Positions 39,665 through 55,681 are shown, counted from the stretch's first letter. The stretch is 64,000 nucleotides of DNA from Mantamonas sphyraenae STR306 (GCA_026936335.1 JAPMXV010000046.1:62001-126000); one strand, 5' to 3'. Made by a program: numbers and translations. Notes: generated from the letters alone by a model not told the origin.

Positions 39665-42298
39665 ATGAGTAGCAGCGATGCGGTGGCTGTCAAAGTGGCC
39701 GTGCGTGTCAGGCCGATGAATGGTGGGTACAAGGCGAGAAGAGAGACGTGGACGGAACCCGTGATTCTGTGTGTGATGGAGTGGGGGCGCCCGCAGAGTG
39801 CGTAACGGCTGACCCTGCGACGGCTTTTTGGCCGTGCTTCTCATGCAGAGACAAAGGAGGCTGGATGCGAGGTGGTGATTGAGATGGATGGAGGCGAGAC
39901 GCGCATCACGGATCCATCCACGAACAAGACGGTAGGGGAACGCGTGCGCAGGAGGGTGGGATAGAGGCTTGGCGCAGGCTCACACGTTGCTCGCAACTCC
40001 ACCGGCACACTTCACCCTCGCACAATGCACACAGGAGCGCTTTACCTTTGACTACTCGTACTGGTGGGACACGCCACAGGACAAGGTGTACCAGGATCTG
40101 GGCCGTCCGATGCTGGAGAATGCTCTGGACGGATACAACGGCACAGTGTTTGCCTACGGCCAGTGCGTTTTTCAGGGTGCTGTGTGGACGCGCGGGACTC
40201 GAGGGCGATGAACAGGTGCAGATGGCTCACACACAACGGGGGTGGGATCATGACGCGTATTTCTCTGTGGCGGTTGGCCACTGTCGTGTCTGCCTGGTGT
40301 GTTCCCTTTCTGCGCACAGGACCGGATCGGGAAAGTCGTTTTCAATGATGGGAGGTCCGAACGATTTGCGCGGTATCACGCCCCGGCTCAACGAGGACCT
40401 GTTCAAGCTTATTTCAGACAAACCCAAGAACCAGGAGTATTCTGTTTACGTCACATATCTGGAGATCTACCAGGAAAAGCTCCGGGATCTGTTGAACCCG
40501 AGCAGCAAGTGAGTTGTGTGGTTCTGCGGTCACCGACGACGCGCGAGGGACGGGGAACGAGAGGGGAGGGCGGTGGGGTTGATGTGGGGGGGAAGGGGGC
40601 ACACACGACACGATCACACGTACACATGTGCACACAAACGCCAAACACTGACACGACGAGCTTGTTGTGCGCTCGCCACACAGGGAGCTGAAGATCCGTG
40701 AGTCGAAGAAGCTGGGTTTCGTGGTGCCTGACTTGTACAAGGCACCCGTAAAGACAACCGAAGAGATTGTGTCTCTGATGGAAGAAGGCAACGCTGTGCG
40801 TGTGGTGGCCGCAACCAAGATGAACGACCACTCGTCACGCTCTCACTCTGTGTTCACCATCCACTTGCGCATGGTGGACAAGAACGACGTGCAGGCAGGC
40901 GCCCTGACAGCCAAGATCAACCTTGTGGATCTTGCCGGTTCCGAGCGAGCCGACTCGACAGGTGCCACGGGAGAGGTGCTGAAGCAGGGTGCGGCCATCA
41001 ACCAGTCGCTGACGGCTCTGGGACGTGTGATCCGCGTGCTTGCGGGTGAACGCAAGAAGGGCGAGTTTGTGCCGTATCGTGACTCGGTACTGACCAAGGT
41101 GCTGCGCGAGTCGCTCGGTGGCAACTCGCAGACTGTGATGCTTGCCGCCTTGTCGCCCGCCGACAAGAACCACGACGAGACCCTGTCTACGCTCAAGTAT
41201 GCCAACAGCGCCAAGAACATCAAGAACAAATCGCGAAAGAACGAGGACAAGAACACAAAGCTGATCCGAGAGCTGCGCGAACAGATCGAGGCTCTGAGGT
41301 CTGGAATGATGGGCGGGTCGAGCAGCGGCGGAGGCTTGGACGCGTCGTCAATGGCCGAGTACCAGGAGAAGATGGAGGAGCTGGAGTTGGCTAAGTCGCA
41401 GACGTTTGAACAGGTGGAGCAGCAGAAGAAGGAGCTTGAGGAGGAGCGACAGCGCAATCTGCGTCAGCGCGGTGTGATGGAGGCGCTGAAGACGAACCTG
41501 AAGCAGCAGAACGAGGAGCGCATTGAACAGCTGCGCTCGGCAAAGGAGGCCAAGCTGGCCAAGTTCCAGGAGGCCAAGTCGAAGCTGATGGCCGTGAAGG
41601 AGCAGTACCAGAAGGATGTGATGGCCTTCCAAGAAAGCGGCCAGCAGGACGAACAGCTGCGGGCCAAGATTGCCAAGGAGAAGAAGTTCCTGGAGAACGG
41701 TGGACGTGCCATGGAGCAACTGAAGGCAGAGTACACAGTGGTGGAGCAGGAACTGCAGGACGAGATGGCGCTTGGCCAGACGGACGATCTGCTGACGCTC
41801 CAGCAAAAGGAGATGGAGCGACTGAAGGAAAAGCAGGCTCGAGAGCTGCAGTTGATGCAGAACAAGATGCAGGCAGCGATGCAGGCACGCAAGCAGGCCA
41901 TGGAGGAAAAGTTCCAGCAGATGGCGTCGGACAGTGTGAGCAAAGAAGAGCACTACCAGATGCAGGTGGAGTTGGAAGAGATGCGTGGCGCCAAGGAGAT
42001 GCTGGAGGCGCAGCTGAAGATGGCACAGAAGGAAAACGCACGGTTGCAGAGCGTCATTGACGAGGAGCAACTGAAGCACGAGCACGAGATGGAAAAAGAG
42101 CGCTTGAGTCTGTTTCGCATGTTCCGCAAGTACCGCGAGTTTGCAGAGGAAGAGTACCGCGACAGGGAGCGCAAGCTGCTGGTCATGGTGGAGCACAGCG
42201 TCACCGACGCGATTTACCTCAACGCCAAAGTCCAGGAGCTGGAAGCCGCTGCAGGGAGCAGCAGTGGAGGAGGAGGAGGTCAATCCAGCAGTGGTTAA
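39665..42298 (+). CDS. Catalytically intact N-terminal kinesin (kinesin-3-like head) with coiled-coil tail; exons 39665-39722, 39849-39931, 40035-40162, 40320-40508, 40684-42298
   Basis: [19 protein letters not shown]|[39 protein letters not shown]; GT-AG introns. Confidence 0.92.
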
Positions 42299-42439
42299 GG
42301 GCTCAAAGATGTGTGTGAGGTACTGCAGATGGAGTCAAATGGAAGCAAATGATCATGTGGTGTGCATTGCTGCGCATTGTGGCTGGCGCTGTGGTCTCCA
42401 GTTGCTTGTGGCTGGCTCGTGCTCTTCCCAACGTCCTCC

Positions 42440-43309
42440 CTACTTCAACATGGACTGCAGCTCGGCAGCCATATCCTCTGCCTCAACCTCGATGCCCTCT
42501 CCGACAGCAAAACGGACAAAGGCGATGTGGTCTGCGGACGGCAAGTGGTCCGAAAGCAGGATGTCAGGGTTGGTTACCAAATTCTGCTGGAGCATCTCAG
42601 CAGCGTCGGCAGGCTGCATGCCAACCACGTGCACGGCAAGGTCCGACGTAGAGACACCCTGGGGCAACGTGGAAGGAGTTCGGAGGGCGACGAGCGAAGA
42701 AAGCATGCCGGCGTTCTTGTCCTTGCCGACGGCGTTGTGGACGTATGCACCGAGGAGGTCGGGAGTGGAAGCAAAAAGGGCGGCGGCGCGGCGGACAATG
42801 ACGTTCTCGCCTGTGGTGTACGCCTGTTCGTTCATGAGTTCTTCGATTTTTCGATCGTGGTTGTCCGCAGAGGCCATCGGCAGCAGCTGCTCAGGTTCAA
42901 GGTCCAGATGGCTGATGTACACGCCTTCAGGGAGGGTAGCCTGAGAAGCTGCAGTGACAGCAGCCTGCGTCACCTGTGTGGCCAGATTGACAAAGGCGTC
43001 GGTGCGAGCCACAAAGTCCGTGACGGTGTTGATTTCGGCCATGGCTCGGCAAAAGATGGGTGCTGAAGATGTGCTCGACGCATGTTCCACTGCTTCAGAC
43101 ACACACACAAGTCCCGAAGCGGCCACGCGTTCCTTGACATTCGACGACTGGCCCTTTTGGCGGAGCAACTTGGCTGCCTCCTGAACGTCGCCCTCGGCCT
43201 CGACCAGAGCCTTTTTACAGTCCATCATTGGAGCGCTGGTGATTGCGCGCAGTTCCTTAATTGCAGCAGCGCTGACGGCAGCTCGGTTGACGGTGGTACG
43301 AACAAACAT
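42440..43309 (-). CDS. TSFM: Mitochondrial elongation factor Ts
   Basis: IKELRAITSAPMMDCKKAL, EINTVTDFVAR, TGENVIVRR, GAYVH, LAVHVVGMQP, FVRFAVGEG. Confidence 0.9.
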   Translation of the reverse strand: MFVRTTVNRAAVSAAAIKELRAITSAPMMDCKKALVEAEGDVQEAAKLLRQKGQSSNVKERVAASGLVCVSEAVEHASSTSSAPIFCRAMAEINTVTDFVARTDAFVNLATQVTQAAVTAASQATLPEGVYISHLDLEPEQLLPMASADNHDRKIEELMNEQAYTTGENVIVRRAAALFASTPDLLGAYVHNAVGKDKNAGMLSSLVALRTPSTLPQGVSTSDLAVHVVGMQPADAAEMLQQNLVTNPDILLSDHLPSADHIAFVRFAVGEGIEVEAEDMAAELQSMLK

Positions 43310-43398
43310 TGGTGCGGGTGTGGGCGAAGTTGGCTTTTTGGTTGCGATGCTGTGGACAGCGCATGTGGTGTCCAGCCCTTTATGCAGGGAGGGATTTG

Positions 43399-43455
43399 TA
43401 TGTGTGTGTGTGTGGGGGGGGGGGGTGGGTGGGTGGGTGGGTGGGTGGGTGTCTG
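43399..43455. repeat. (TG)n-poly(G)-(GGGT)n tract, potential G-quadruplex
   Basis: A run of about 12 G followed by about 6 TGGG units in the spacer upstream of EF-Ts. Confidence 0.8.
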
Positions 43456-43490
43456 TGTCTGTGCAGGGATGGGTACAAATTGGAGCTCTA

Positions 43491-45211
43491 CTACTTCTTG
43501 CTCTTCTTCTTGCTCTTTCCCTTGTCCTTCTTGGCTGACTTGTCCTTCTTGGCCTTCCCCTTGTCCTTTTTGCCCTTTTCCTTCTTGCCCTTGTCCTTCG
43601 TCTTCTCCTTGCCCTTCTTGGGCGACTTTTTCGAAGCCTTCTTCTCCTTGCCTTTGCCCTTGGACTTGCTCGATTCCCCCGAGGACTTGCCAACCTTGAC
43701 AGTGAGCTGTTTAGCTTTTCCGGACGAGCCTGACGTGGAGCCTGAGCTGCTTCCTGCGCCCGAGGCCTCTGCCCCGTTGCCGTCGTCATCGTCTTCGTCG
43801 TCGTCGTCGTCGCCCTCGTCGTCGCCCTCGTCATCGCTGCTGCCACTGGAGCTGGAAGAGCCACTCTTCTTGAGGGCCTTTTTGTAAGCGATTTCCTGCT
43901 CGATTTTGCGCTCCTCGTCCTCGTCCAGCACGAGGTTGGCGAGCATATTGTGCGCAGTTGTCTTTTTCATGACCGTGCGTGTGATCTTGTTGCCGACAAT
44001 CTTGGCAGAGTTGACCAAGGCACACAGTTTGTCGTTTGTGTCGGCCAGGGATGTGTCACGCCTGGGCAGGACAGGCACAAAGCAAGTGAACGCTGGGCCT
44101 CCAAGCGCCTCTGCGTTGCACATGCAGAGGGTGGAGTTGATGTACGAAGCCTGTTGGCCCTTGAGCAGTGCGTCATACACTCCCTCCATAGCCTCCAGTT
44201 CAGAGACGGCGTCCTTGTGGGAGTTGACCTCGACAACGGACAACTCAAGAGAGCCCATGTGCACCGCAGCCACTCCTATGCGCTGTACCTCGATGCCCAG
44301 CACCGTGTGCACGGGGCCCGGGTGGTCGTCGCGCCACTGCTTAAGGCATTGGTGTGCGGTGCGAGTCAGCCTGCGTAGTGCCAATTGGCCGCGGATGATC
44401 TGCCACTTGAGGTTTGTTTCGACGCTGCGCCGAAAACACGCACACACGCACACACGCATGCAGAGTGAGCACGATCCGGTGTGAGCATCCAATACGTCGC
44501 TGCATGCTTATGGGCGACGTCTATGCAGTGGTGGGCCTCGGCGGGCAGCCGAGACATGGGCCACGAAAGCCGGATAAGGAAGGCAGAGCCGTGAGGGGAA
44601 AAACTCACAAGCCACGACGATCTCTGCGCATCGGCAGCTTTTCGGCGCCCTGCAGCAGGTCGTACACGGTGTCTTCGTGGACCATCAGATAGCTGGCTTT
44701 CATGGCAAACCTGTTGGCCATGCGGTCTGCTGACGAAAGGGTGGCAAAGAGGGCAGACACCACCTCGTCGACGATGGTCGGCTCCTCCCCAGCTTCCTGG
44801 CCACTGGCTCGCAAATAATCAGGTGCCTGTTCCGCAGCGACCATGGCCAGGACAGATACTGGGCAGTTGTGATGCATGGGGTGTGTCTGAGTGTCAATGG
44901 ACTGCCTGCCATGCGCACGTGCGCCCTGGAACGTGCAACTGACCGTTTCCTCCCTCCATCAGCTGCTCCAAGCGCAGGCTGTCGGTGTGCTCAGCCAACG
45001 AGGCCTTGTCGACAGCAATGCCATCAAACTTGTACGATGACGATGTGCCTCCTTCCTTGATGATCTCTGCGTCGTGGTCGCCCGTGACTTGGATTAGATC
45101 GACGTCGCTTTCCCCTTGCGCGTCGTGCACCAGCAGGATGCTCCGCACTTGCGCTGTTTCGGCCACCACCGCTCCTGCCTCCCCACTGGAAGCATTGTCA
45201 GAGGTGCTCAT
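43491..45211 (-). CDS. Highly degenerate kinesin-motor-like protein (no P-loop) with acidic and Lys-rich tail; exons 45211-44944, 44858-44609, 44424-43491
   Basis: Kinesin landmarks in order: YKFDGI, MKASYLMVHEDTVYDLL, RG|FVETNL, SYINSTL..EALGGPAFTCFV, SAKIVGNK. Two GT-AG introns join the frames. Confidence 0.6.
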
Positions 45212-45317
45212 GCTCTGGTGGGTGGCTGGATTGTGTGTTCAGTTCAGTTGGGGGAACGAGAGACTGAGACGCTTTTGTTGGTTTCGGATTGCACCTGAGC
45301 ACATCCACTCCTCACAC

Positions 45318-46333
45318 TCACTCCACACGTGTGCACGTCCCGTTTCCCAGGCTCGTCATGTACTTGAGCGTGGTGCGCGTCTCGTCTGCGACCAGATCCG
45401 CCGGAGACACGCTGCCGATGCACAAAGTGTGTCCACCGCCACACATGGCCTGCTTGAGCAGCTTGGTCAGTGTGCTGTCGCGGTAAGGCACGACTGTGCT
45501 GCTGGATCCGCTCGCACGCTTCTCGTGCAACACCTCAGCCATGGCCTTGAGCGCCTGCTGGCCCTCGTACACCGCCGCGTCCTGCCTGCTCGCGGGACGG
45601 AACGACGCAAGAAGCACAAGCTGCAGGCGACTGGTCACCTCTTCGTCGTTTTCCTCAAACGTGAGGTCCAGCTCAACAAGGGTGTGGCACACCGAGACGA
45701 CACCCCCGTTCTCGCCATCGCTTCCGACGCTGCAGTTCTCCAGCGCAGCCTCGATCTTCTGCATCGCATCTTCATATGACGCGACGCTGTGCGTGCTGAT
45801 GCCTTCCACGAAAGCACCCGTCTTGGGCTGGATGCGCACACGCAAGTTGGCATTCTCGGTTTCCACAAGGTCTCGCACCGAATCACCCACCTCCAACACC
45901 TTGAGTTCCACCTGCAGGTTTTCCACATTGTCCGCCTGCGCAAACACGTCCATGCACGCACGCGGCACAATGCCTCGATTCTCGCCGTAGCCCAAGGCCG
46001 CGTACGCCTTGCCCGAGCCTTGCGCTCCACAGGCAATCACGCACACGTCCTCGCCCTCCATGAGGCAGTCCACCAGCTGCTTGCCCACTTGATCGTACAC
46101 GTCCTCCTGCTCAAAGTTCTCGTACACGTGGTCGAATTCGTACTTCTCAACCAAGGGTCCGCCGCTGAACTCATCGCTCAAACTCAGTGACAGCGATTTG
46201 GGCCCCTCAACGGTCACCGCAGCCGTGCTCTTCACATCTTTCTCAAGTGTGTTGAACGGGCGCACCGTGATTACGCTTGTGCAAGGGCCCAGTGTCGAGC
46301 GCTTTTCGTGCTGCGGCTTTGCGCCGCTGCTAC

Positions 46334-46372
<39 letters not shown>

Positions 46373-49300
46373 CTGCCACACGGCTCTTGCCATCGACCAA
46401 GTACTTAAGGAAGCGCAAGGTGTCCCTGGACTCCTTGGCGACCATGTCGGCGGGCGAAACGGCTGCAATGAACAAACCGTGCCCAGAGCCGCTCAGACTG
46501 TTCTTCAACAGCATGGTGAGTGGGGTGGTGCGGTAGGTCACGACGGCATTCTTGGCCTTGTTGTGTCGCTTCTGGTGAAGAGCTTTGGCCACGTTGCCCA
46601 GGGCTGACAAGGACAGGCTGATCTCTGCGTCGATGGTGTCGGCGATCGATGCGACGGACGCCAGATCAACCATTTGCAGAACACTGCTCACCTCTTCGTT
46701 GTCCTTTTCAAACGTGATATGCAACTCGAAGATGGTGTGGGCCATGGACGCCGTGGAGTTTCGCTCAGTGGCGCGGATGCTGCGGTTTTCTGAGGCCCGT
46801 TCCATGAGCTGTTGGACCTCGTCGTACGAGTTCACCCGGTGACTGCTGAGTCCGTCCACGTAGTAGCCTGTCTTGGGTTGCAAGCGCACACGCAGCGACT
46901 TGTTGCCCGTGTCGATCAGATCTTGCACCGAATTGCGCACTTCCATGGCCTTCAACTCCACCTGCAGGTTGTCCACCTGGTCTCCCAGGCTGAACACCTC
47001 GGAACAGATGCGCGGCACAATGCCTGGCTTGTCGCCGTAGCCCACCATGGCGTACGACTTGCCAGAACCGGTTGCGCCGTACGCCAGAACCGCCACGTCC
47101 TGACCTTGCAGCAGCTGCTCCAACAGCGGACGACCCACCTGCTCGTACACTTCTTCCTGCTCGAATCCTCGTACACGTGGTCAAACTCAAACGTCTCTGG
47201 CGCGCGCTCCTCCCCCAGGTCGACCGTGATGCTCGTGGCGTTTTCCACCGTCACAGCACGTTTGCATCCGCTCGTCTTTTCCAAATGGTTGAACGGACGC
47301 ACAGTCACCATGCCCATGGTGGTGCCGGTTGCCTTCTTCTCCTTCTTGGAACGTTTGGGCTTGCTGCTGCTGCTTCCGCCGCTGCTGCTGCTGCTTCCGC
47401 CACCGCTGCCACTGCTGCCTTCGTCGTTCATGTCATTGGTCACCGACCCACCTGTCAGCAGAGAGACAAACCTGAGAGTGGAGCGCGATTCCGAGGCGAC
47501 CAAGTCCGCAGGCGAGACTGCGCCAATGAAGACGGTGTGTGTGCCCGCCGCCCAGGCCATTCTGCAGCAACCTGGTCAACGCGCTGTCTCGGTAGGGCAC
47601 GAGAATCTTCTTGTTGGGGTTCTTCCGCTGTTTGTTCAGCGAAGACGCCACGTTCGAGAGCACTGTCAAGGAGGTATTGCACTCCGTGATCAACTTGAGG
47701 ATGTGCGGATCCGAGGATGTGTGGTAGGAAGACAAGTCGACAAGCTGCAACTTGCTGGTCACAGTTTCGTCTTTGGTCTCAAAGGAGAAGTCCACCTCGA
47801 TGATGGTGTGACCCAAGGACGACGTCGAGTTCTGATCGGTCGACACAACCGTGCGGTTTGCAATCGCGCTCTGAAGCAGAGCCTCCACTTGCGTGTAAGA
47901 CTCCACCACCTTGCTTGTGAGTCCTTCCACAAAGACACCATGCTTGGGGCTGGTGCGGACCTTGAGGGCCTTCCTGGACGAGTCCAGAAGGTCGAAAACA
48001 CCGCCCATCACCTCCATGACCTTCATCTGCACGTTGAGGTTGTCCACTTTGTCGCCCAGGCCGAACATTTCGTTGCAGATGCGCGGCACAATCCCAGGCT
48101 TGTCGCCGTAACCGATAAAAGCGAACGACTTGCCCGAGCCGGCAGCGCCGTATGTGATTACGCACACATCCTCGCCTTCCAGCAAACGGTCCAAGAGTGG
48201 ACGGCCCACCTCTTCGTACACGTCGGCTTGATCAAAGTCCTCGTACACGTGGTCAAAGGTGTAGGTTTCCGAGCCGCGTCCCTCACCCCGGTCCACCGTC
48301 ACCGTGGTTGCACTGGTCACGCTCACTGCTCGCCCACTGTTGGAGGATGTCTCGAGACGGTTGAACGGGCGCACGGTGATCATGCCCATGATCGTGCCCC
48401 CCTTCGTCTTCTTGCGACGTAGGGGTTTTCCGCTTTCGCTGCCACTGCTGCTGCCACTGCTGCTGCCACTGCTGCTGTTGCCACTTGCAGACGAAGACGA
48501 GGCCTTGGACGCCTTGGAGGAGGACGACAGGCTGCTGACGTCGTCGACCTGAGAGGCTCCAAACGCCGTCAGGAATCGCAGCGTGGACAGACTCTCTTCA
48601 AACATGATGTCTGCTGGCGACACAGCTCCGATAAACAGGCGTGTGCCGTGGCCGTTGAGGGAGCGCTTGAGCAGCATGGTGAGGGGCGAGTTGCGGAATC
48701 CGACGACATTCTTTTTCGCCCTCCCCTTGCCTTTGCCCTTGCTTTGGGCGCTAGCGGCCACCACACGGCCGAGGATGTTGAGCGATCGGTTGACATCGAT
48801 GGCTGCCTTGTCAGAGGTGTCGATGATGTGCTGCTGGCCGACCAGATCCACCAGTTGGAGCGTGGCGGAGGTGGTTTCGCCGTCGCGTTTGTGGGAAACG
48901 TTAACGGACACCACAGCGTGCTTTGACAACGCCAGTGAGTTCATGGCGCTGGATCGCGTTTCTCGCTGTCGCTGTCCAACCTCCATCACTCGCCGCAGGT
49001 GGTCGTAGTCATCGACTTTCTTGGTCACCACGCCGTCCACAAAAGGCCGTTTGTCACGACCTTCGCGCACGCGCAGTTCGCCCTTCTTCTTGGTCAACAG
49101 ATCCGTAACGCCGCCCATGCACATCTCCACCATGCTGATGGTCACCTCCAGTCCTTCCAGCTCACCCTCCTGGGCAAATACCTCGGTGCAGACCCGCGGC
49201 AACAGGCCCGGATTCTCGCCGTACCCAATGGCCGCATACGATTTGCCTGAGCCTGTTGCTCCATACGTCATGATGCACACATCGTCGCCGTTGAGAAGTG

Positions 49301-49529
49301 ATTCCACGAGCGTGGTGCCCACGTCGGCGTACACGTCTTCCTGCGAAAAGTCCTGGTACACGTGGTCAAACGCAAACGCGTATGACAAACTTTCGTCGTC
49401 GGGGTTTTGCAGCGTAATGGTCGAATCATCGACACGCTGAACAATTGCGGAACATCCCATGGTGCGCTCACGATTGTTGAACGGTCTGATGGTCAGCACC
49501 GTTGTCGAAGAAGTGTGCTTCGAAGACAT
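45318..49529 (-). CDS. Protein of four tandem kinesin-3 (KIF28/KLP-6-like) pseudo-motor domains, ~1403 aa; compensating indels at ~47545 (+G) and ~47164 (-T)
   Basis: Four units (about 49500-48570, 48400-47465, 47320-46400, 46290-45360), each TxRPFNxxE..FDHVY..GxxGSGK..GYG...G[IL][VL]PR..LTxLL..VSPAD..TL[RK][FY], separated by Ser/Gly linkers. Confidence 0.85.
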
Positions 49530-49583
49530 TTTTGTTTGGGTGGAGGACAGGTCGCTGCCATTTTTTGCCCCACTTGCATGTGC

Positions 49584-51129
49584 TTACACAGGCATCTCCC
49601 GGTGACGTGTCACCTTTTTCTTGCGCCCTGCAAGCAAGGCGCTGTAGTCCAGCGTTCGAATGGACTCTCCCATGCGCTTCTTGTCGTTTGTTCCCGTCAC
49701 ACAAAACACGGTCGAGATGGCCGCCCCACTGTCGAATGACTCGCGCAGCAGACGCGTCAGCACGTGATTGCGATACGGGATACGCTTCTTGTTGTCAGCG
49801 CGCGCTCGGATGCACTCTTTCAAGGAGAGCAGCGAGGAGTTGATGTGTGCTGCCTCTTGCCTCGTCAGCGACTCCATCGTGTCCATGGACTGCACCTCGT
49901 TGCCCGCAAGGTCCACAAAGTTGAGCGTGTTGTTCATCAACAGTGCGTTCTCGTCCTCATCCATCACTGCCTGCACATTGGCACGGGCCTGGTCGACGGC
50001 GACGGACTGGGCAGCGTAGGTCTCCTCCAGTTCCTCCAGTGCTTGTTTCGTCTCGCTGTCCATTGCATCCATCATGCGATGGGCGTGCGAGTTTCCACCT
50101 CCCACGACCTGCTCGTCCACATCGGCATTTGATTCCTGCTCTTGCGCCGCTGCGCTCTCCATTGCTTTTCCAATCTCCACAATCAGCCCATCCCGGGCGT
50201 ATCCAATTTCAGTCAACGTGTCTTCAGCCTCCACGACTGCCGCCTCTGCATCCAACAGAGCTTGCGTGACAACCGCGAACCTGATCAAGCAGTGCGACCG
50301 CGAGCTCTGGTCATGCACATGATTGGCCTTGGTTTGCCTCATCTCACGACCTACGTCTATCAGAGCAGACGCCTCGTCCACTGACTTGACCAGAGTCTGT
50401 TCGAGCCCACGCACGTGCGTTCGTCGGTCGCTTGACGTCAGCACCGCCACTTCCGCCCGCCCGTTCAGCAGATCGAATGTCGATTTGCCATACACTTCCA
50501 CCATCTCCATACGCAGCTCATACTCTCCTTGCAGCTGCTCCAGCGTCTCCAACATCGCCTGTGCCCCAAGCAGTGCCAGTCCTGGCTGCTCCGGGTTTCC
50601 AAAGATTGTGTGGGTCTTGCCACTGCCTGTGTAGCCATAGCAGAAGCATGTTCCTGTGCGACCACCATGCCCATTCTGAAGCGTCAGTCACCTGGAATTC
50701 CGTTGTTGCCGTTGGCAATTGGCGCGCCAAGGGAATTCCCCGTCTCCCGCACATACCACATCCTCCCAATTGCAGTCGCTCCACCAGAGGCAGGCACACA
50801 CTCTCGAAAAGACCTTGGGTGTCCACTTCGGGCCCAAAGGCCTCGTCCATGGAGAAACAATGGGTGATGGGTTCGTTGAATTCAATCCCTCGCCTGGAGA
50901 TGCGCAGGTGATCCAACGTCATGGTGACCTTGCCCCTTCCATCCTCATCGTCATCCAAAATCCGCTCGTCAAACTGGCCCGGCTCGTCATCCAGAAGTGG
51001 GCGGATGCGGCAAAACACCTTTGCTTTCGGTGCCTCGTTCTCCGCAATGGCTATGCGCTTGCGCACAGACTGCCCGGCGACAGGCAGAACGGTGTTGCCG
51101 CTGTCATTTTCTGAGCGGGTGGTGGACAT
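49584..51129 (-). CDS. Motor-only orphan kinesin with ~100-aa helical insert; exons 51129-50757, 50653-49584
   Basis: VFCRIRP, CYGYTGSGKT (spliced), VHDQSSRSH, FVDLAGNE, INSSLLSLKECIRA, IPYRNHVLTRLL. Confidence 0.88.
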
Positions 51130-51199
51130 GGTCGATACCTTTGTGTGTTGGCTGCCGCGGCGCAGCCGCACACAACCCTGCAACCTCTCCTTGCCTCCC

Positions 51200-54100
51200 A
51201 TGAGCAAGAGCAAGGCTTTCTCCAACTCTGGAGAGTTTCTTGCAAGTAAAGACAGAATACTCACCGTGACGGCCATACGGCCGTTCAATTCGAGGGAAAC
51301 GAACCGCGACGCAAAGAAGGCGATTTCAAAGCGCGACGCCAACACAGTCGTGTGCACAAACGCAGAGGGCGAGGAGAGGGAGATCGAGCTGGACTATGTG
51401 TACGAAGACTTCACTCAAGCGGAGGTGTTTGAAGACATCGGCCAAGATATCCTGGAATCCGTACGAGAGGGAAACAACGTCCTCTTCCTCGTTTTCGGCC
51501 AAAGCGGCTCGGGCAAGAGCTACATCGTCATAGGATTCGGCGAGAACAAAGGCATTTTCCCGCGTGTGTGTGAAACCCTGTTTGGATCGACCGAACTCCA
51601 GAGTGCCGCCATTTCCATGGTGGAGGTCGGCCACATGGGCGTGCACGACCTCCTCTCCGGCGAAAAGATAGCACGCACAGACTCAAATTGGTCCAACGTG
51701 CCAGAACGTGTCGTGGAAACACACGAGCAGGTGATGGAGGCCATCGACACCGGCTCCATGAACCGTTCCGTGGCCGCTACAAACATGAACGCGACGTCCA
51801 CACGCGGTCACACCCTCATTCGGCTCCACTTTACGTTTCGTGGAGGACAACAATCAAATCTCTGCATCGTGGACATGGCTGGCAGCGAGCGCGTGGCTTT
51901 GTCTGGTGTCACGGGGATCCGGTTGAAGGAGTCGTCGTTCATCAACACGTCGTACGTCAGGCTGCGCAACGTGCTTACCGCCGTCCGTCGTCGCGGACAA
52001 GATCAAGCCAACTTCCATGTGCCCTATCGTGAATCGATCTTCACACAGCTTCTGCAGCCGTACCTGGACTGGGGGCGGGTGGCCCTCTTTGGCGCCGTGG
52101 CTCCAACCCTGGACACGTACGACGAAAGCATGATGACTCTCCGCACCCTGGACGAACTGAAAGACCCCGAGTCTGTCGCTGAGAGCAGACTGAGGAGTGC
52201 TAGGCGACTGAAGGCACAAGCCGAGGCAAACCTAAATAGCGGCAGCGCGGGCAGCACCAATGCCAATGTCGACACGCACGGCGAGCACGACGACGGATGG
52301 AAAACGCAGGACGGATTGTTGGACATGTGGAATGCCCACCTGCAGGCTCTTGGCAGTCTGCAGAACGCATCCACAGTGCCAAAAAGCGACTCGGGAAGCC
52401 GGTTGCACCTGGCATGGCTCTCCGACGAAGCGACCAGCAACATTGGTGACATTGGACGTATGGTGGCAGTCCACGTGCACTCCGGGTTGATGCGTGGACT
52501 CAATGCGTGTGTGATGACTACGGGAAACGCCTCGACCACATCAGCAGACGGAATGGCATGCATCGACGAGGAGGTTGTCCGACAGCTGGTCTTGTGCCGG
52601 CAAGGAGAATGGCAAGGACAGTTGAATGTGTTCTCGATCTGGATTCGAACAGACGACGCCGTGATCGACCTTGGCATGGATGATAGGCAAGAGGTTATGG
52701 TCACCTACACGGACGGGATGGTGATTGAAAACTGCACCATGGCCACCATTGCATGTGTACGGGAGTGGCAAACGTGGCGCACAGCGTGTGAGGCTCGTGT
52801 AGATCAACTGGGAGGCCTCCAAGGGCCGCAAACACTCAAGAACGGGATCGTGGTCCATTTGCTCAAACCACATGGTGCTCAAGGCGCAGCTGTGGCGATG
52901 GTTCACTTGGCGAACGACGCAGCATCTTCACTGAAGGAGTATCGCTGCAACCAAGACTTGGCGTTTGCGGACGTGCTCGACAGTATGAGTCACATGGCGG
53001 TGCAGCAGGTGTTGAGGCTCAAGTTGACGCAACAGCAGAGGGTGGTGTGCGACATCTTGCGAGACTGCTTGACGGGAAACGTGGCGCTGGTGCACCGCGG
53101 CGCGTTGAAAGATGGCTGGGAGGCCCTGGACTCCATCTCCGAAGGAGGTTGCAGGCCGGTGGTGCGACCGATGAATCATTGGTCAACATGGGTGCAAGCA
53201 CAAGCAGAGACGGTGGAGCGAGTGGCAACGCTCGCGGCGGCGCTGTGTTCGTCTCGACGGGACGCAGGCGTGTTGCTCGTGGATCAGGACGACGAGACAG
53301 TGCGCAGGGTGTTGAGCACAGCCGCTGAAGCCGTGTTTGCACAGGCGCTGGAAGGAGACACGCTGTGGGTGAGTGCATTTGCATGGACCGAGCAGGACCA
53401 GGTTGGAGACACAAGGCAGGCGAAGAGGTTGCACACAGGCGTTGCGTCCGAACTGCAGCAGTTTGTGGAGACAGAGTGGGAACACACCGTGCATTGGGAG
53501 TGGGCAGTGTGGTCAGAAACCACACACGAACAGCGATCGCTGCACGTGCACGTATCACAGGATGCGAGCAAGGCTGATGGCACAGAGTGGCCGCTGGCCG
53601 AGTGGTCCGTGCTGGTGAACAGTGCCGATGCAGCCAAGGCATGGCAAAGCGAGCCACAACGGGACCTGGTGCGATGTGTACGCGTGCGTCCCGTGCTGGA
53701 AAGGGAGATGGTGCACGAGGACAACAGAGACCCGTCGTCATACAGCAACGTGGACGTGGGTGGAGCGTGTGTGAGGTGGCGACCTGGCTTGCTGGCGGAA
53801 GCCGAGCACGTGTTTCACAATGCGTCCTGCGGCGATATGTGGAAGTCACTTGGACCGGGATTGGTAGAGGCGGTTTTGCACGGGGAGAGGCCAGCGATGG
53901 TGAGTGCGTTTGGGGGAGTGGGCACGGGCAAGTCGTACGCGCTGTTGGGGGTTGAGGGCAAAGAGTACGGGTTGATTGCCCGCTTTGTGCAGCAGGTGCT
54001 GGAAGAGAGCGATGGGGAGGCACGTGTCGATGTGGGTGTTCTCATGTGTCGCTACAAGGCAACCGGGGTGATGGATCTGCTGGCGGACGACGAGCCCCAG

Positions 54101-55681
54101 AAGCGCAGGTTGCGTCAGACTCGCAACGAACCCCATGCACACGTGGAGGACGAGGTGCGCGTTGCAGTCCACAGTGCAGAAGACGTCCACAAGCAATTGA
54201 ACAAGGCGATGCTCACCCTTCGACGATGGGTGACGCTCATGGGCACGCGTTCGTCCGATTTCATGTGGATGGCCGAGGTACAAGTGAACGGCATCCCTGT
54301 GCAGTTTCTGCACCTAAAGGTGATGGACCCTTCAATGACTGCGTACCGCACGCTGATGATGGATCGCATGCACCTTGCTTTCCACCTGGTAACCGGGCAT
54401 TTGGACAAGCCGTTCCTGCGCTGGCGCGAATTGCCCCTGACGCGCCTGGTACAGCGCGTGCTGGACCATCCACATTCCTATGAGGTGCAAATGGCCTGTG
54501 TTGCCCCGACCAAAACGAACGCCAAGTCGGAACTGGCACTGACAGAGGCGACGCAGTCCACACTGGAATTCCTCAATGGCTTGGTGGACGCTCGCGACCT
54601 ACCGCAGCTCAAGACCCTGCTGCGCAAACACAGCAGCGACTATGAGCTGGTCACCATGGACGAGCTGGCACAAGAAGAGCGAGACGCAAGGTGGGACTCT
54701 TCCTCCACGCTCTCCTCCTCCTCCTCATCGTCGTCGTCGTCGTCTTCACAGGCATGGATGCAGGAGTTGAACGAAGTTATGGTGGAGAACATCATGAGAG
54801 AGTACTCGGTGATGGTAGACGAGCGCTCGGAAGATGGCATGGACTGTTTGAGCGTGCAGGACGAGCAGACGCTGGTGTTCAAGGAAGACGAAAGGACGTT
54901 TCAGTTTGACCGCGTCATGGCACACAAGCACCCAAGCGAGGTGTGGAGCGGCATTCGGACAGGTATTGTGGGTCAGTTTGTCAAGGGCAGCCACGACGGC
55001 GTGGTGATGCTGTATGGGCAGACTGGAGCCGGCGACGAGGCCTTTGCAAGCCACCTCGCCAATTTCGCGAAAGACTCGCTGGCGTGCATGCAGGCGGAGA
55101 CCAAGCTGTCAGTGAGTATGTCTGTCGTGCGTGGTGGCCAGTGGATTGACTTGTTGGTGGAGGACGGAGTCATGGACAGCAACGACAGCAAGCGTGCTTT
55201 CACCCGAGTCAAGTGGGTGGAATTGGACACAATGGTCGAGCTGCAGCACTGGTACAAAACGGCATTCGGTACAAAGATGCAGGACGGAGGCGTGGCTGGT
55301 TCCTCGGACGACACCGCAGTCGTGGCCATTCGCAACTCGAACAACACCTTTTACTTTGTGCGACTGCCCGGTTCGCAGCGCCTGTACAGCAATCAGGGTG
55401 ACGAGAACGAGCTCAAGGCGCACAGGGAAGCTCAGTACGCACTGTCCAGTGTACTGAATGTGCTCGCGGAGCTCCTGAAGGAGTCCAGCCGCAGCCGCTT
55501 CATTCCGTGGCGCGATTCCATCCTGGCCAGGAACTTGCAGGCTCCTTTGACAGAAGGCCATCTGTTCTTCTTCACCCATGTGCTGTCACATGTCACCGCG
55601 TACGAGGAGTCACTTTCGTCGGTGCGTTGTTTGGACCGCCTGGCAAGTTCCGGTGGGGGGGGTTCGAAGCGACGCAGGTGA
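51200..55681 (+). CDS. Multi-head kinesin (1493 aa): one intact motor followed by 3-4 degenerate motor domains
   Basis: Head A has AIRPFNSRE, GQSGSGKS, NATSTRGH, DMAGSER, VPYRES. Later heads have VRVRP/GGVGTGKS/WRELPLTRLV and FQFDRV/LYGQTGAG/RLPGSQR/IPWRDSILAR. Confidence 0.82.
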   Translation: MSKSKAFSNSGEFLASKDRILTVTAIRPFNSRETNRDAKKAISKRDANTVVCTNAEGEEREIELDYVYEDFTQAEVFEDIGQDILESVREGNNVLFLVFGQSGSGKSYIVIGFGENKGIFPRVCETLFGSTELQSAAISMVEVGHMGVHDLLSGEKIARTDSNWSNVPERVVETHEQVMEAIDTGSMNRSVAATNMNATSTRGHTLIRLHFTFRGGQQSNLCIVDMAGSERVALSGVTGIRLKESSFINTSYVRLRNVLTAVRRRGQDQANFHVPYRESIFTQLLQPYLDWGRVALFGAVAPTLDTYDESMMTLRTLDELKDPESVAESRLRSARRLKAQAEANLNSGSAGSTNANVDTHGEHDDGWKTQDGLLDMWNAHLQALGSLQNASTVPKSDSGSRLHLAWLSDEATSNIGDIGRMVAVHVHSGLMRGLNACVMTTGNASTTSADGMACIDEEVVRQLVLCRQGEWQGQLNVFSIWIRTDDAVIDLGMDDRQEVMVTYTDGMVIENCTMATIACVREWQTWRTACEARVDQLGGLQGPQTLKNGIVVHLLKPHGAQGAAVAMVHLANDAASSLKEYRCNQDLAFADVLDSMSHMAVQQVLRLKLTQQQRVVCDILRDCLTGNVALVHRGALKDGWEALDSISEGGCRPVVRPMNHWSTWVQAQAETVERVATLAAALCSSRRDAGVLLVDQDDETVRRVLSTAAEAVFAQALEGDTLWVSAFAWTEQDQVGDTRQAKRLHTGVASELQQFVETEWEHTVHWEWAVWSETTHEQRSLHVHVSQDASKADGTEWPLAEWSVLVNSADAAKAWQSEPQRDLVRCVRVRPVLEREMVHEDNRDPSSYSNVDVGGACVRWRPGLLAEAEHVFHNASCGDMWKSLGPGLVEAVLHGERPAMVSAFGGVGTGKSYALLGVEGKEYGLIARFVQQVLEESDGEARVDVGVLMCRYKATGVMDLLADDEPQKRRLRQTRNEPHAHVEDEVRVAVHSAEDVHKQLNKAMLTLRRWVTLMGTRSSDFMWMAEVQVNGIPVQFLHLKVMDPSMTAYRTLMMDRMHLAFHLVTGHLDKPFLRWRELPLTRLVQRVLDHPHSYEVQMACVAPTKTNAKSELALTEATQSTLEFLNGLVDARDLPQLKTLLRKHSSDYELVTMDELAQEERDARWDSSSTLSSSSSSSSSSSSQAWMQELNEVMVENIMREYSVMVDERSEDGMDCLSVQDEQTLVFKEDERTFQFDRVMAHKHPSEVWSGIRTGIVGQFVKGSHDGVVMLYGQTGAGDEAFASHLANFAKDSLACMQAETKLSVSMSVVRGGQWIDLLVEDGVMDSNDSKRAFTRVKWVELDTMVELQHWYKTAFGTKMQDGGVAGSSDDTAVVAIRNSNNTFYFVRLPGSQRLYSNQGDENELKAHREAQYALSSVLNVLAELLKESSRSRFIPWRDSILARNLQAPLTEGHLFFFTHVLSHVTAYEESLSSVRCLDRLASSGGGGSKRRR

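What the first reader, a model, noticed from the sequence alone, without database searches (positions are those of the whole stretch)
39665..55681. Kinesin island: five kinesin-family genes and about 11 motor folds in 16 kb
Seen: an intact kinesin-3-like motor (+), a P-loop-less pseudo-kinesin (-), the four-head protein (-), an orphan motor-only kinesin (-) and the multi-head kinesin (+), interrupted only by EF-Ts. They differ in intron content and subfamily signatures, so this is not one recent tandem array. The orphan kinesin and the multi-head gene share a 70-bp divergent spacer. Inference: a co-regulated module or a local birthplace of active and pseudo-motor microtubule proteins, a candidate undescribed cytoskeletal system.
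Basis: partly seen in the sequence, partly recalled or inferred. Interest (0 to 1): 0.8.

Follow-up and report, generated by a model that had tools for sequence, protein, structure and literature searches.

The report
Kinesin gene island with multi-head kinesins
A 16-kb stretch of a small marine flagellate genome (apparently Mantamonas sphyraenae) really does pack five kinesin-type genes. Two of them encode single proteins made of several motor heads in a row, most of them catalytically dead; no such architecture has been characterised, and its function is still only inferred.

Summary
Window 39665-55681 holds K1 (a canonical five-exon kinesin-3), EF-Ts, a probable P-loop-less pseudo-kinesin, a four-head gene (4H), K4 (kinesin-13-like, motor-only) and a multi-head gene (K5). 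Nine motor folds pass Pfam's cut-off, one more is probable, and one is unverified.

In this assembly 4H carries two compensating 1-nt frameshifts. Independent short-read contigs remove both, giving one ORF of about 1,400 codons. 4H is transcribed and shows an excess of synonymous variants (11 of 17, P=4e-4). All four heads keep the P-loop but lack the switch I Arg and the switch II Glu. K5 has one active-looking head and at least two dead ones.

The 4H and K5 heads are each other's closest relatives and derive from a KIF28-like kinesin-3. They are old local duplications (35-52% identity). K1, K4 and the pseudo-kinesin belong to other lineages.

Clustering is non-random: P is about 7e-5, or about 0.01 once paralogues are collapsed. 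No orthologue appeared among 1.84 billion protein representatives.

Co-regulation and a "cytoskeletal system" remain untested. The scan had already noted this same stretch (not other DNA) several times.

The parts
39665..42298 (+). K1: a canonical kinesin-3 with five exons. Motor pieces lie at 40017-40166, 40300-40503 and 40664-41221; exons 1-2 lie upstream, from the ATG at 39665. The tail is a coiled coil.
   Evidence: Pfam Kinesin E 4e-62 on the last exon. HMM pieces. The P-loop GQ|TGSGKS is split by an intron; SSRSH, DLAGSE and the [12 protein letters not shown] neck are present. Best solved structures are KIF13B and KIF1A.
42440..43309 (-). EF-Ts (mitochondrial-type elongation factor Ts), the only non-kinesin gene inside the island.
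   Evidence: Pfam EF_TS E 3.6e-16. The likely start Met is at 43309.
43491..45211 (-). Probable pseudo-kinesin (PK). It has at least three exons and no P-loop, and ends in an acidic then Lys-rich tail.
   Evidence: Pfam Kinesin 22.2 bits, E 8e-5, below the cut-off. The three exons match a kinesin profile in order, at template positions 24-86, 98-156 and 253-314. The language-model neighbours are all kinesin clusters at 0.87, a lead only. Frame-compatible GT..AG sites exist.
45318..49529 (-). 4H: a four-head kinesin with no stalk and no intron. Heads lie at 49490-48570, 48374-47465, 47302-46407 and 46196-45354, joined by 40-60-aa Ser/Gly-rich then Lys-rich linkers.
   Evidence: Pfam E 3e-124 and 2e-107 on the two large ORFs. 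Four HMM domains. The P-loop is kept; the switch I Arg and switch II Glu are lost in all four heads. Synonymous vs nonsynonymous variants: 11 vs 6.
47163..47544 (-). Segment read in another frame in the window, bounded by two compensating 1-nt frameshifts at about 47544 and 47163-47165. These are most likely errors of this assembly.
   Evidence: Three-frame reading. Contigs of X1 and X2 lack one base at 47544. Both allelic contigs in X1 and X2, and the one X3 contig listed there, carry one extra base at 47163/47165.
48725..48742 (-). Lys-rich L12 loop ('K-loop') of head 1. Short-read contigs carry 42 more bases here, in frame.
   Evidence: table 5c (X1, X2, X3). Sequence context SKGKGKGRAKKN just before the FRNSPLT motif.
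49584..51129 (-). K4: a motor-only, kinesin-13-like kinesin. Exon 1 is 51129-50757, the intron 50756-50654 (103 nt, GT..AG) and exon 2 50653-49584. An acidic insert of about 100 aa lies between switch I and switch II.
   Evidence: The intron is skipped by an X3 contig. Motifs: GYTGSGKTHT, SSRSH, DLAGNE, LKECIRA. Pfam E 8.5e-54. Best solved structures are KIF2C/MCAK, 106 bits.
51130..51199 (.). The 70-nt divergent spacer between the K4 and K5 start codons.
   Evidence: Sequence reading.
51200..55681 (+). K5: a multi-head kinesin with no intron, 1,493 aa counted from the ATG at 51200. Head 1 (51275-52147) looks active. The middle (52163-53680) is unassigned. Two dead heads lie at 53681-54583 and 54803-55648.
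   Evidence: Pfam E 2e-81 for the whole ORF; 6.9e-15 and 1.3e-12 for the two dead heads. hhalign probability 99% for both dead heads. Motifs. Best solved structures for head 1 are kinesin-3.

Best explanation
The island is a real, lineage-specific hotspot of kinesin diversification in a compact 25-Mb protist genome, apparently Mantamonas sphyraenae.

A motor-only unit derived from a KIF28-like kinesin-3 was duplicated in place and the copies were fused head to tail. This produced two intron-less proteins without a stalk. 4H has four heads joined by flexible Ser/Gly/Lys linkers. K5 has one catalytically competent-looking head plus at least two dead heads. These two genes sit beside three kinesin genes of other lineages: K1 (canonical kinesin-3), K4 (kinesin-13-like) and a degenerate pseudo-kinesin.

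Shown: 4H is one intact ORF in independent data. It is transcribed and evolves under purifying selection.

Inferred: the 4H heads keep the P-loop, the alpha4/L12/alpha5 microtubule-binding elements and Lys-rich K-loops, but lack the switch I Arg - switch II Glu pair needed for hydrolysis. They should therefore bind nucleotide and microtubules without turning over ATP. 4H would then act as a covalently multivalent, non-motile lattice binder, stapling or cross-linking microtubules, with tandem heads doing the job that coiled-coil dimerisation does in ordinary kinesins. K5 would be one ATP-gated head tethered by dead heads.
For: Kinesin folds and coordinates.

Intactness: the frameshifts at about 47544 and 47163 in the window are absent from the contigs of independent runs.

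Transcription: an X3 contig skips a 103-nt GT..AG intron in K4, ends about 23 nt past the K4 stop, and X3 contigs cover 4H to within 3 nt of its stop. Three 151-nt contigs from an aquatic metatranscriptome match 4H without a mismatch.

Selection: 11 synonymous vs 6 nonsynonymous variants in 4H against an expected synonymous share of 0.24, binomial P=3.8e-4.

Motif status of every head.

Common origin: the heads are mutual best hits at 36-52% identity; the next best are L016 and L020 at 33-43%, not K1 at 29-35%. The four 4H heads form a clade with support 0.76-0.82. Kinesin-3 affinity.

No stalk: only 11 aa follow head 4, and the linkers are low-complexity.

Clustering. Flanking genes are unrelated housekeeping genes.
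Against: No biochemical or localisation data exist, so microtubule binding and the lack of ATPase are inferred from motifs alone.

Short-read contigs break at the low-complexity linkers between heads 1-2 and 3-4. A single mRNA spanning all four heads is therefore not directly shown; only the 2-3 linker is bridged by a transcript contig.

The grouping of K5 heads with 4H heads in the tree has low support (0.27-0.39). The tree uses only the C-terminal half of the motor.

Some variants counted for selection may be assembly errors rather than alleles.

The run taken as a transcriptome (X3) is labelled 'DNA?'. Its RNA nature is inferred from the skipped intron and its contig profile.

No relatives could be examined, so conservation is unknown.
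Confidence: 0.6

Rival explanations
1. One reading: the five genes form a co-regulated functional module, a dedicated cytoskeletal system whose active and dead motor proteins work together on one microtubule structure, and are kept together by selection.
For: Kinesin lineages that appear independent (K1, the multi-head group, K4, the pseudo-kinesin) lie within 16 kb. P is 7e-5 counting four Pfam-supported genes, and about 0.01 for three lineages. K4 and K5 share a 70-nt divergent spacer. K4, 4H and the pseudo-kinesin follow each other on one strand with gaps of 54-106 nt. 4H and K4 are both transcribed in culture.
Against: No co-expression, synteny or localisation data are available. EF-Ts sits inside the island. 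Contig depths differ (about 12-18 for 4H vs 57 for K4) and cannot be used as expression levels.
Confidence: 0.15
2. The multi-head ORFs are not used as single polypeptides. They would be polyprotein-like precursors that are cleaved, or they would be translated from internal Met codons, giving single-head kinesin-like proteins.
For: Heads 2 and 3 of 4H are each preceded by a conserved Met-Gly-Met just before the first beta-strand, and by a Lys/Arg-rich stretch that could be a cleavage site. A two-motor ORF also occurs in a transcript of a dinoflagellate, Biecheleria; from my own knowledge, dinoflagellates are known for polyproteins.
Against: Head 4 has no such Met. There are no stops between the heads. 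A transcript contig bridges linker 2-3. The linkers have been kept in frame despite 35-52% divergence between heads.
Confidence: 0.1
3. The multi-head genes are decaying duplicates, or an assembly artefact of a tandem kinesin array, with no function.
For: The window sequence of 4H has two frameshifts. Catalytic motifs are eroded in 6 of the 7 recognised multi-head folds. No orthologues were found anywhere.
Against: Both frameshifts disappear in independent contigs. The ORFs run for about 1,400 and 1,493 codons without a stop. There is an excess of synonymous variants. 4H is transcribed. The P-loops and microtubule-binding motifs are selectively retained while the switch residues are lost, a pattern typical of pseudo-enzymes rather than of random decay.
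Confidence: 0.05

Closest known systems
KIF28 / KLP-6-type kinesin-3 motors, and the same genome's paralogues on contigs C60 (L016) and C6 (L020)
   Same: These are the best database and PDB matches of the 4H and K5 heads, at 30-43% identity. Lys-rich L12 'K-loops' are present in 4H heads 1-3.
   Different: 4H and K5 have no neck linker or neck coil, no FHA domain and no tail. They carry several heads in one chain. The switch I and II catalytic residues are lost in all 4H heads and in two K5 heads.
Kar3-Vik1 / Kar3-Cik1 (kinesin-14 paired with a non-catalytic motor-homology domain); from my own knowledge
   Same: One catalytic head is combined with a nucleotide-dead kinesin-fold domain that still binds microtubules. 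This is the arrangement I propose for K5.
   Different: In Kar3-Vik1 the two folds are separate polypeptides joined by a coiled coil, and Vik1 has no P-loop. Here the folds are covalently linked in tandem, derive from kinesin-3, and most keep the P-loop. I tested no homology to Vik1.
Immotile or rigor-like kinesins (KIF26A/B of kinesin-11; switch-mutant 'rigor' kinesins); from my own knowledge
   Same: The motor fold is kept for microtubule binding while ATP turnover is lost. Mutating the switch I Arg or the switch II Gly/Glu in kinesin-1 gives tight, non-cycling microtubule binding.
   Different: Those are single-head domains in dimeric proteins with tails. 4H has four such heads in series and nothing else.
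Predicted tandem-motor proteins in other taxa: Achlya hypogyna OQR84285.1 (2 motors), a Biecheleria cincta transcript EP00930_P040102 (2 motors), and Acanthoscelides obtectus gene models (3-7 motor stretches)
   Same: Each has more than one Pfam kinesin domain in one predicted protein.
   Different: They are only 29-36% identical to 4H, so they are not orthologues. They are uncharacterised, and the genome-derived ones may be gene-model fusions. I did not check whether their heads are catalytically dead.
Kinesin-13 (KIF2C/MCAK), for K4
   Same: K4 has GSGKTHT, DLAGNE and the LKECIRA motif, and KIF2C is its best solved-structure match.
   Different: There is no KVD finger in loop 2 by inspection. 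K4 has only about 120 aa before the motor's P-loop and almost nothing after the motor. It carries an acidic insert of about 100 aa. Its margin over other kinesin families is small (106 vs about 97 bits).

Membership tests
Kinesin motor domain superfamily (PF00225) | Profile match above Pfam's gathering score (29.3 bits) | tested here: met
   Met for K1, all four 4H heads, K4 and three K5 heads. Not met for the pseudo-kinesin (22.2 bits) or for the K5 middle (no hit).
Kinesin motor domain superfamily (PF00225) | P-loop GxxxxGK[S/T] | tested here: met
   Present in K1, K4, 4H heads 1-3, and K5 heads 1 and 3. 4H head 4 has GSGKA, K5 head 4 has GAGD, and the pseudo-kinesin has none.
Kinesin motor domain superfamily (PF00225) | Catalytic switch I (SSRSH) and switch II (DxxGxE) | tested here: not met
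   Canonical only in K1 and K4, and near-canonical in K5 head 1 (STRGH, DMAGSE). All four 4H heads lack the switch I Arg and the switch II Glu. K5 heads 3 and 4 are degenerate. These heads have the kinesin fold but are not predicted to be active ATPases.
Kinesin motor domain superfamily (PF00225) | Microtubule-stimulated ATPase or motility | not testable with these tools
   This needs purified protein.
Kinesin-3 | Closest similarity to KIF1A, KIF13, KIF16 or KIF28 motors | tested here: met
   Holds for K1, 4H head 1 and K5 head 1. In the C-terminal-half tree only K1 sits inside the kinesin-3 clade. The multi-head clade sits apart on long branches.
Kinesin-3 | Lys-rich insertion in loop 12 (K-loop) | tested here: met
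   By inspection, 4H head 1 has SKGKGKGRAKKN, plus 14 more residues in the read contigs. Head 2 has NKQRKNPNKK and head 3 has QKRHNKAKN. I did not score these statistically.
Kinesin-3 | Neck linker and neck coil, followed by an FHA domain | tested here: not met
   K1 has the [12 protein letters not shown] neck, but no FHA domain was found in its tail. 4H and K5 have neither.
Kinesin-13 (K4 only) | Family motifs: KEC in alpha4, DLAGNE in switch II, GSGKTHT in the P-loop | tested here: met
   LKECIRA, DLAGNE and GSGKTHT are all present.
Kinesin-13 (K4 only) | KVD finger in loop 2, and a positively charged neck N-terminal to the motor | tested here: not met
   There is no KVD in exon 1 by inspection. 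The spliced model was not joined, so loop 2 was read from exon 1 alone.
Kinesin-13 (K4 only) | Phylogenetic placement with kinesin-13 | tested here: inconclusive
   Best PDB hits are KIF2C at 106 bits, against about 97 bits for the next family. K4 groups with paralogue L023 at support 0.67, and L023 was not itself classified.

The most novel reading that the evidence does not exclude
4H and K5 would represent a new architectural class of kinesin-derived proteins, in which multivalency comes from covalent tandem heads rather than from coiled-coil oligomerisation. 4H would be a four-site, nucleotide-locked ruler or staple spanning about four tubulin dimers. K5 would be a single-chain analogue of Kar3-Vik1, one ATP-gated head with dead tether heads. 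Together with the neighbouring kinesin-13-like K4 and the pseudo-kinesin, they would build or remodel a lineage-specific microtubule structure of this gliding flagellate.
Probability: 0.2. Interest if true: 0.8.

Novelty: new variant of a known kind. Interest (0 to 1): 0.55.

Why it matters
Kinesins are textbook dimeric motors. A natural protein made only of four motor heads in series, all selectively stripped of the hydrolysis switch but keeping the nucleotide pocket and the microtubule-binding face, would be a clear case of a motor fold reused as a multivalent microtubule-binding module. Its sister gene may show an intermediate state, with one live head and several dead ones.

The organism appears to be Mantamonas (CRuMs), a deep branch near the base of Amorphea, so the genes also bear on how cytoskeletal repertoires diversify. 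The genes are cloneable and the predictions are directly testable in vitro.

The value is limited in two ways. The family seems confined to one little-studied lineage, and the function is inferred from motifs only.

Tried and rejected
- IQ-TREE with bootstraps failed on thread count and then timed out. I used FastTree on the C-terminal half of the motor instead.
- AlphaFold2 on the K5 middle (52163-53680) without an alignment gave pLDDT 39, unusable, so I ran no fold search on it.
- hhalign and BLAST of that region against kinesin profiles and against the island's own heads were not significant.
- The language-model search returned only kinesin clusters, but at 0.83, which is a lead only.
- The look-up of encoding contigs found no record of K5.
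- Rfam found nothing in the window.
- The metagenome scan with 4H heads 1-2 found no relative.
- Four full-text literature searches and a read of Wickstead et al. 2010 found no description of tandem-motor kinesins or of Mantamonas kinesins.
- I considered stop-codon read-through fusing K4 to 4H, because both are in the same frame, 54 nt apart, with a single TAA between them. The variant allele still has a stop (TAG), and the coincidence has a chance probability of roughly 0.14, so I rejected it.
- I rejected K1 as the parent of the multi-head genes: it is 29-35% identical to their heads, against 33-43% for L016 and L020.
- The spliced models of K1, K4 and the pseudo-kinesin were never joined. 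Their exons were searched and aligned separately by reference, so no whole-protein search or fold of these three was done.


Full report
**Source.** The window is G000:C46:62001-126000 of a genome of 25,061,354 bases in 78 contigs at about 59% GC. These figures match exactly the FALCON PacBio assembly of Mantamonas sphyraenae: 25.06 Mb, 78 primary contigs, GC 59.19% (PMC10492846). I therefore take the organism to be this marine gliding flagellate of the CRuMs group. This is an inference from assembly statistics, not a sequence identification. That paper does not mention kinesins, and no paper in the library links Mantamonas to kinesin biology.

**What is in the region.** I scanned all six frames with Pfam and with a kinesin HMM built from 11 canonical motors of the same genome. 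In order, the region holds:
- **K1 (+, 39665-42298).** It has five exons, with the P-loop split by an intron (AYGQ | TGSGKS). It carries canonical SSRSH and DLAGSE, a kinesin-3 neck ([15 protein letters not shown]) and a coiled-coil tail without an FHA domain. Its best solved structures are KIF13B and KIF1A.
- **EF-Ts (-, 42440-43309)**.
- **A probable pseudo-kinesin (-, 43491-45211).** Its three exons match a kinesin profile in order, at template positions 24-86, 98-156 and 253-314 (hhalign P 0.017, 6.6e-6, 0.0084). It is below Pfam's cut-off (22.2 bits) and has no P-loop. A language-model search of the last exon returns only kinesin clusters at 0.87, which is a lead only.
- **4H (-, 45318-49529),** with four complete motor domains.
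- **K4 (-, 49584-51129).**
- **K5 (+, 51200-55681).**

The flanking genes are unrelated: a PhyH dioxygenase, a GTPase, a Cav-type channel, a DEAH helicase and ATG16.

**The four-head gene is intact.** In the window, 4H is broken into three reading frames. Head 2 loses its last 25 or so positions, and head 3 its first 48 or so, to a second frame between about 47544 and 47163. I laid contigs of independent public runs on 45301-51300. In X1 and X2 one base is missing at 47544. Both allelic contigs in X1 and X2, and the one X3 contig listed there, carry one extra base at 47163/47165. These two changes are exactly what restores a single frame. The gene is therefore one ORF of about 1,403 codons. 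A further 14 codons come from a 42-nt in-frame Lys-rich expansion at 48725-48742 that all three runs carry. The window's frameshifts are most likely residual PacBio consensus errors.

**Transcription.** Run X3, labelled 'DNA?', behaves as a transcriptome. One of its contigs skips 103 nt with GT..AG ends on the minus strand (50756-50654) inside K4 and ends about 23 nt after the K4 stop. Another ends 3 nt after the 4H stop. Its contigs cover 4H and bridge the head 2-3 linker. An aquatic metatranscriptome (X5) holds three 151-nt contigs that match 4H without a mismatch.

**Selection.** Of 17 single-base variants in 4H across the runs, 11 are synonymous, against an expected share of 0.24 (binomial P=3.8e-4). 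This argues for purifying selection on the protein.

**Anatomy of the heads.**
- **4H:** every head keeps a P-loop (GATGSGKS, GAAGSGKS, GATGSGKS, GAQGSGKA) and the alpha4/L12/alpha5 motif (VPYRDSxLT or close variants). Heads 1-3 have Lys-rich L12 loops. All four lack the switch I arginine (LALSKH, TSSLGH, TASMAH, VVSVCH) and the switch II glutamate (DLVGQQ, DLSSYH, DLASVA, LLASFR). The heads are joined by 40-60-aa Ser/Gly-rich then Lys-rich linkers. There is no neck linker, no coiled coil and no tail; 11 residues follow head 4.
- **K5:** it has one active-looking head (GQSGSGKS, STRGH, DMAGSE; residues 119-414 of the ORF that opens at 50921). Two clearly recognisable dead heads follow (residues 921-1221 and 1295-1576; Pfam E 7e-15 and 1e-12, hhalign probability 99%). 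About 500 aa between head 1 and the dead heads could not be assigned.
- **K4:** its gene model comes from the transcript intron. It has GYTGSGKTHT, SSRSH, DLAGNE and LKECIRA, and its best solved-structure matches are KIF2C/MCAK. It lacks a KVD finger and carries an acidic insert of about 100 aa.

**Origin.**
- By BLAST, the four 4H heads are each other's best matches at 36-52% identity.
- Their best match outside the island is L016 on contig C60. Over the C-terminal half of the motor, L016 and L020 (contig C6), which group with the KIF28 reference, score 32-43% identity against 29-35% for K1.
- K5 head 1 is closest to 4H head 2 (34.5%) and to L016 (36%). The second recognised K5 head, the dead head at residues 921-1221, is closest to 4H heads 1 and 4.
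- A FastTree of the C-terminal half of the motor recovers the four heads as a clade (support 0.76-0.82). The K5 heads attach to it only weakly (0.27-0.39). K1 sits inside the kinesin-3 clade, and K4 sits elsewhere.

So 4H and K5 are old, local products of duplication and head-to-tail fusion of a KIF28-like motor-only unit. None of their seven recognised heads contains an intron, whereas K1 has four and K4 has one. K1, K4 and the pseudo-kinesin are separate lineages.

**Clustering.** One search gives 39 Pfam-supported kinesin genes. Outside this island no two lie closer than about 48 kb. With random placement, P(>=4 in any 16 kb) = 7e-5 and P(>=3) = 0.011. If 4H and K5 are counted as one origin and the sub-threshold pseudo-kinesin is left out, the conservative figure is about 0.01. 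The island holds all the multi-head ORFs seen in the genome.

**Relatives.** Word-based searches with 4H heads 1-2 and with K5 found only single-head kinesin-3s (KIF28 and similar) at 30-40% identity over one head. An exhaustive phmmer search of 1.84 billion cluster representatives gave at best 205 bits and 29-43% identity. An orthologue with several heads would have scored far higher. JGI metagenome contigs gave nothing. The Mantamonas vickermani and M. plastica transcriptomes could not be queried directly, so absence from close relatives is not established.

The search did show that predicted proteins with two or more kinesin domains exist sporadically elsewhere: an Achlya hypogyna gene model, a Biecheleria cincta transcript and some beetle gene models. 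None is close to 4H and none is characterised. Full-text searches found no description of a tandem-motor kinesin.

**How it probably works (inference).** From established kinesin enzymology (my own knowledge), the switch I Arg - switch II Glu salt bridge and the switch II Gly are required for hydrolysis. Mutating them gives nucleotide-bound heads that bind microtubules tightly. 4H retains the pocket and the microtubule face but not these residues. I therefore predict a non-motile protein with four microtubule-binding sites on flexible tethers, that is, a lattice staple, ruler or cross-linker. K5 would combine one ATP-gated head with dead tether heads, working like Kar3-Vik1 but within one chain. 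K1 and K4 look like ordinary active kinesins, for transport and possibly depolymerisation.

Whether the five products act together is unknown. The data show transcription of 4H and K4 only. Contig depths cannot rank expression.

**Limits.**
- The single read-laying run covered 45301-51300 only, so K1, the pseudo-kinesin and most of K5 have no transcript evidence here.
- Spliced models (K1, K4, pseudo-kinesin) were analysed exon by exon by reference. The joined proteins were not built, searched or folded.
- Short-read contigs break at the low-complexity linkers 1-2 and 3-4.

**Verdict.** The 'local birthplace' reading is supported for the two multi-head genes. The 'co-regulated cytoskeletal system' reading remains a hypothesis. 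This is a new architectural variant within the kinesin superfamily, of moderate-to-good interest.

Noticed in passing
window 47163-47165, 47542-47544, 48725-48742: Compared with the contigs of three independent runs, the assembly differs by a missing base, an extra base with two adjacent substitutions, and a collapsed 42-nt Lys-codon repeat. Other long ORFs in this genome may be split by similar residual long-read indels.
   Followed up: yes
window 49529-49586: The K4 stop (TAA, 49586-49584) and the 4H ATG (49529) are only 54 nt apart and in the same frame, with no other stop between them. The K4 transcript contig ends at about 49561, so the 4H 5' UTR must be under about 30 nt or the two are co-transcribed. 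The variant allele keeps a stop (TAG).
   Followed up: partly
window 49544-49584: One haplotype (run X2) differs at 8 positions within 40 nt in the K4-4H spacer, far above the roughly 0.3% divergence seen in the adjacent coding sequence.
   Followed up: no
window 45315 and 49561: Transcript contigs end 3 nt and about 23 nt after the stop codons of 4H and K4. This suggests extremely short 3' UTRs in this organism.
   Followed up: no
window 46691-46841, 46914-47064, 48128-48278: An aquatic metatranscriptome (X5, 2025) contains 151-nt contigs that match 4H without a mismatch. The same or a near-identical strain therefore occurs in an environmental sample.
   Followed up: no
P0022, P0025, P0018, P0027: Predicted proteins with 2 to 7 kinesin-domain stretches occur in Achlya hypogyna, Biecheleria cincta (a transcript) and Acanthoscelides obtectus. 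Whether they are real multi-head proteins or gene-model fusions was not examined.
   Followed up: partly
window 23108-28408 (-): A 1,766-aa ORF carries several Ion_trans domains and a GPHH motif. It is a Cav/Nav-type voltage-gated channel, and lies about 11 kb upstream of the island.
   Followed up: no
window 50921-51199 (+): The K5 open frame extends 93 codons upstream of the likely ATG at 51200, running antisense across K4 exon 1. This is probably not translated. K5 is therefore 1,493 aa rather than 1,586.
   Followed up: partly
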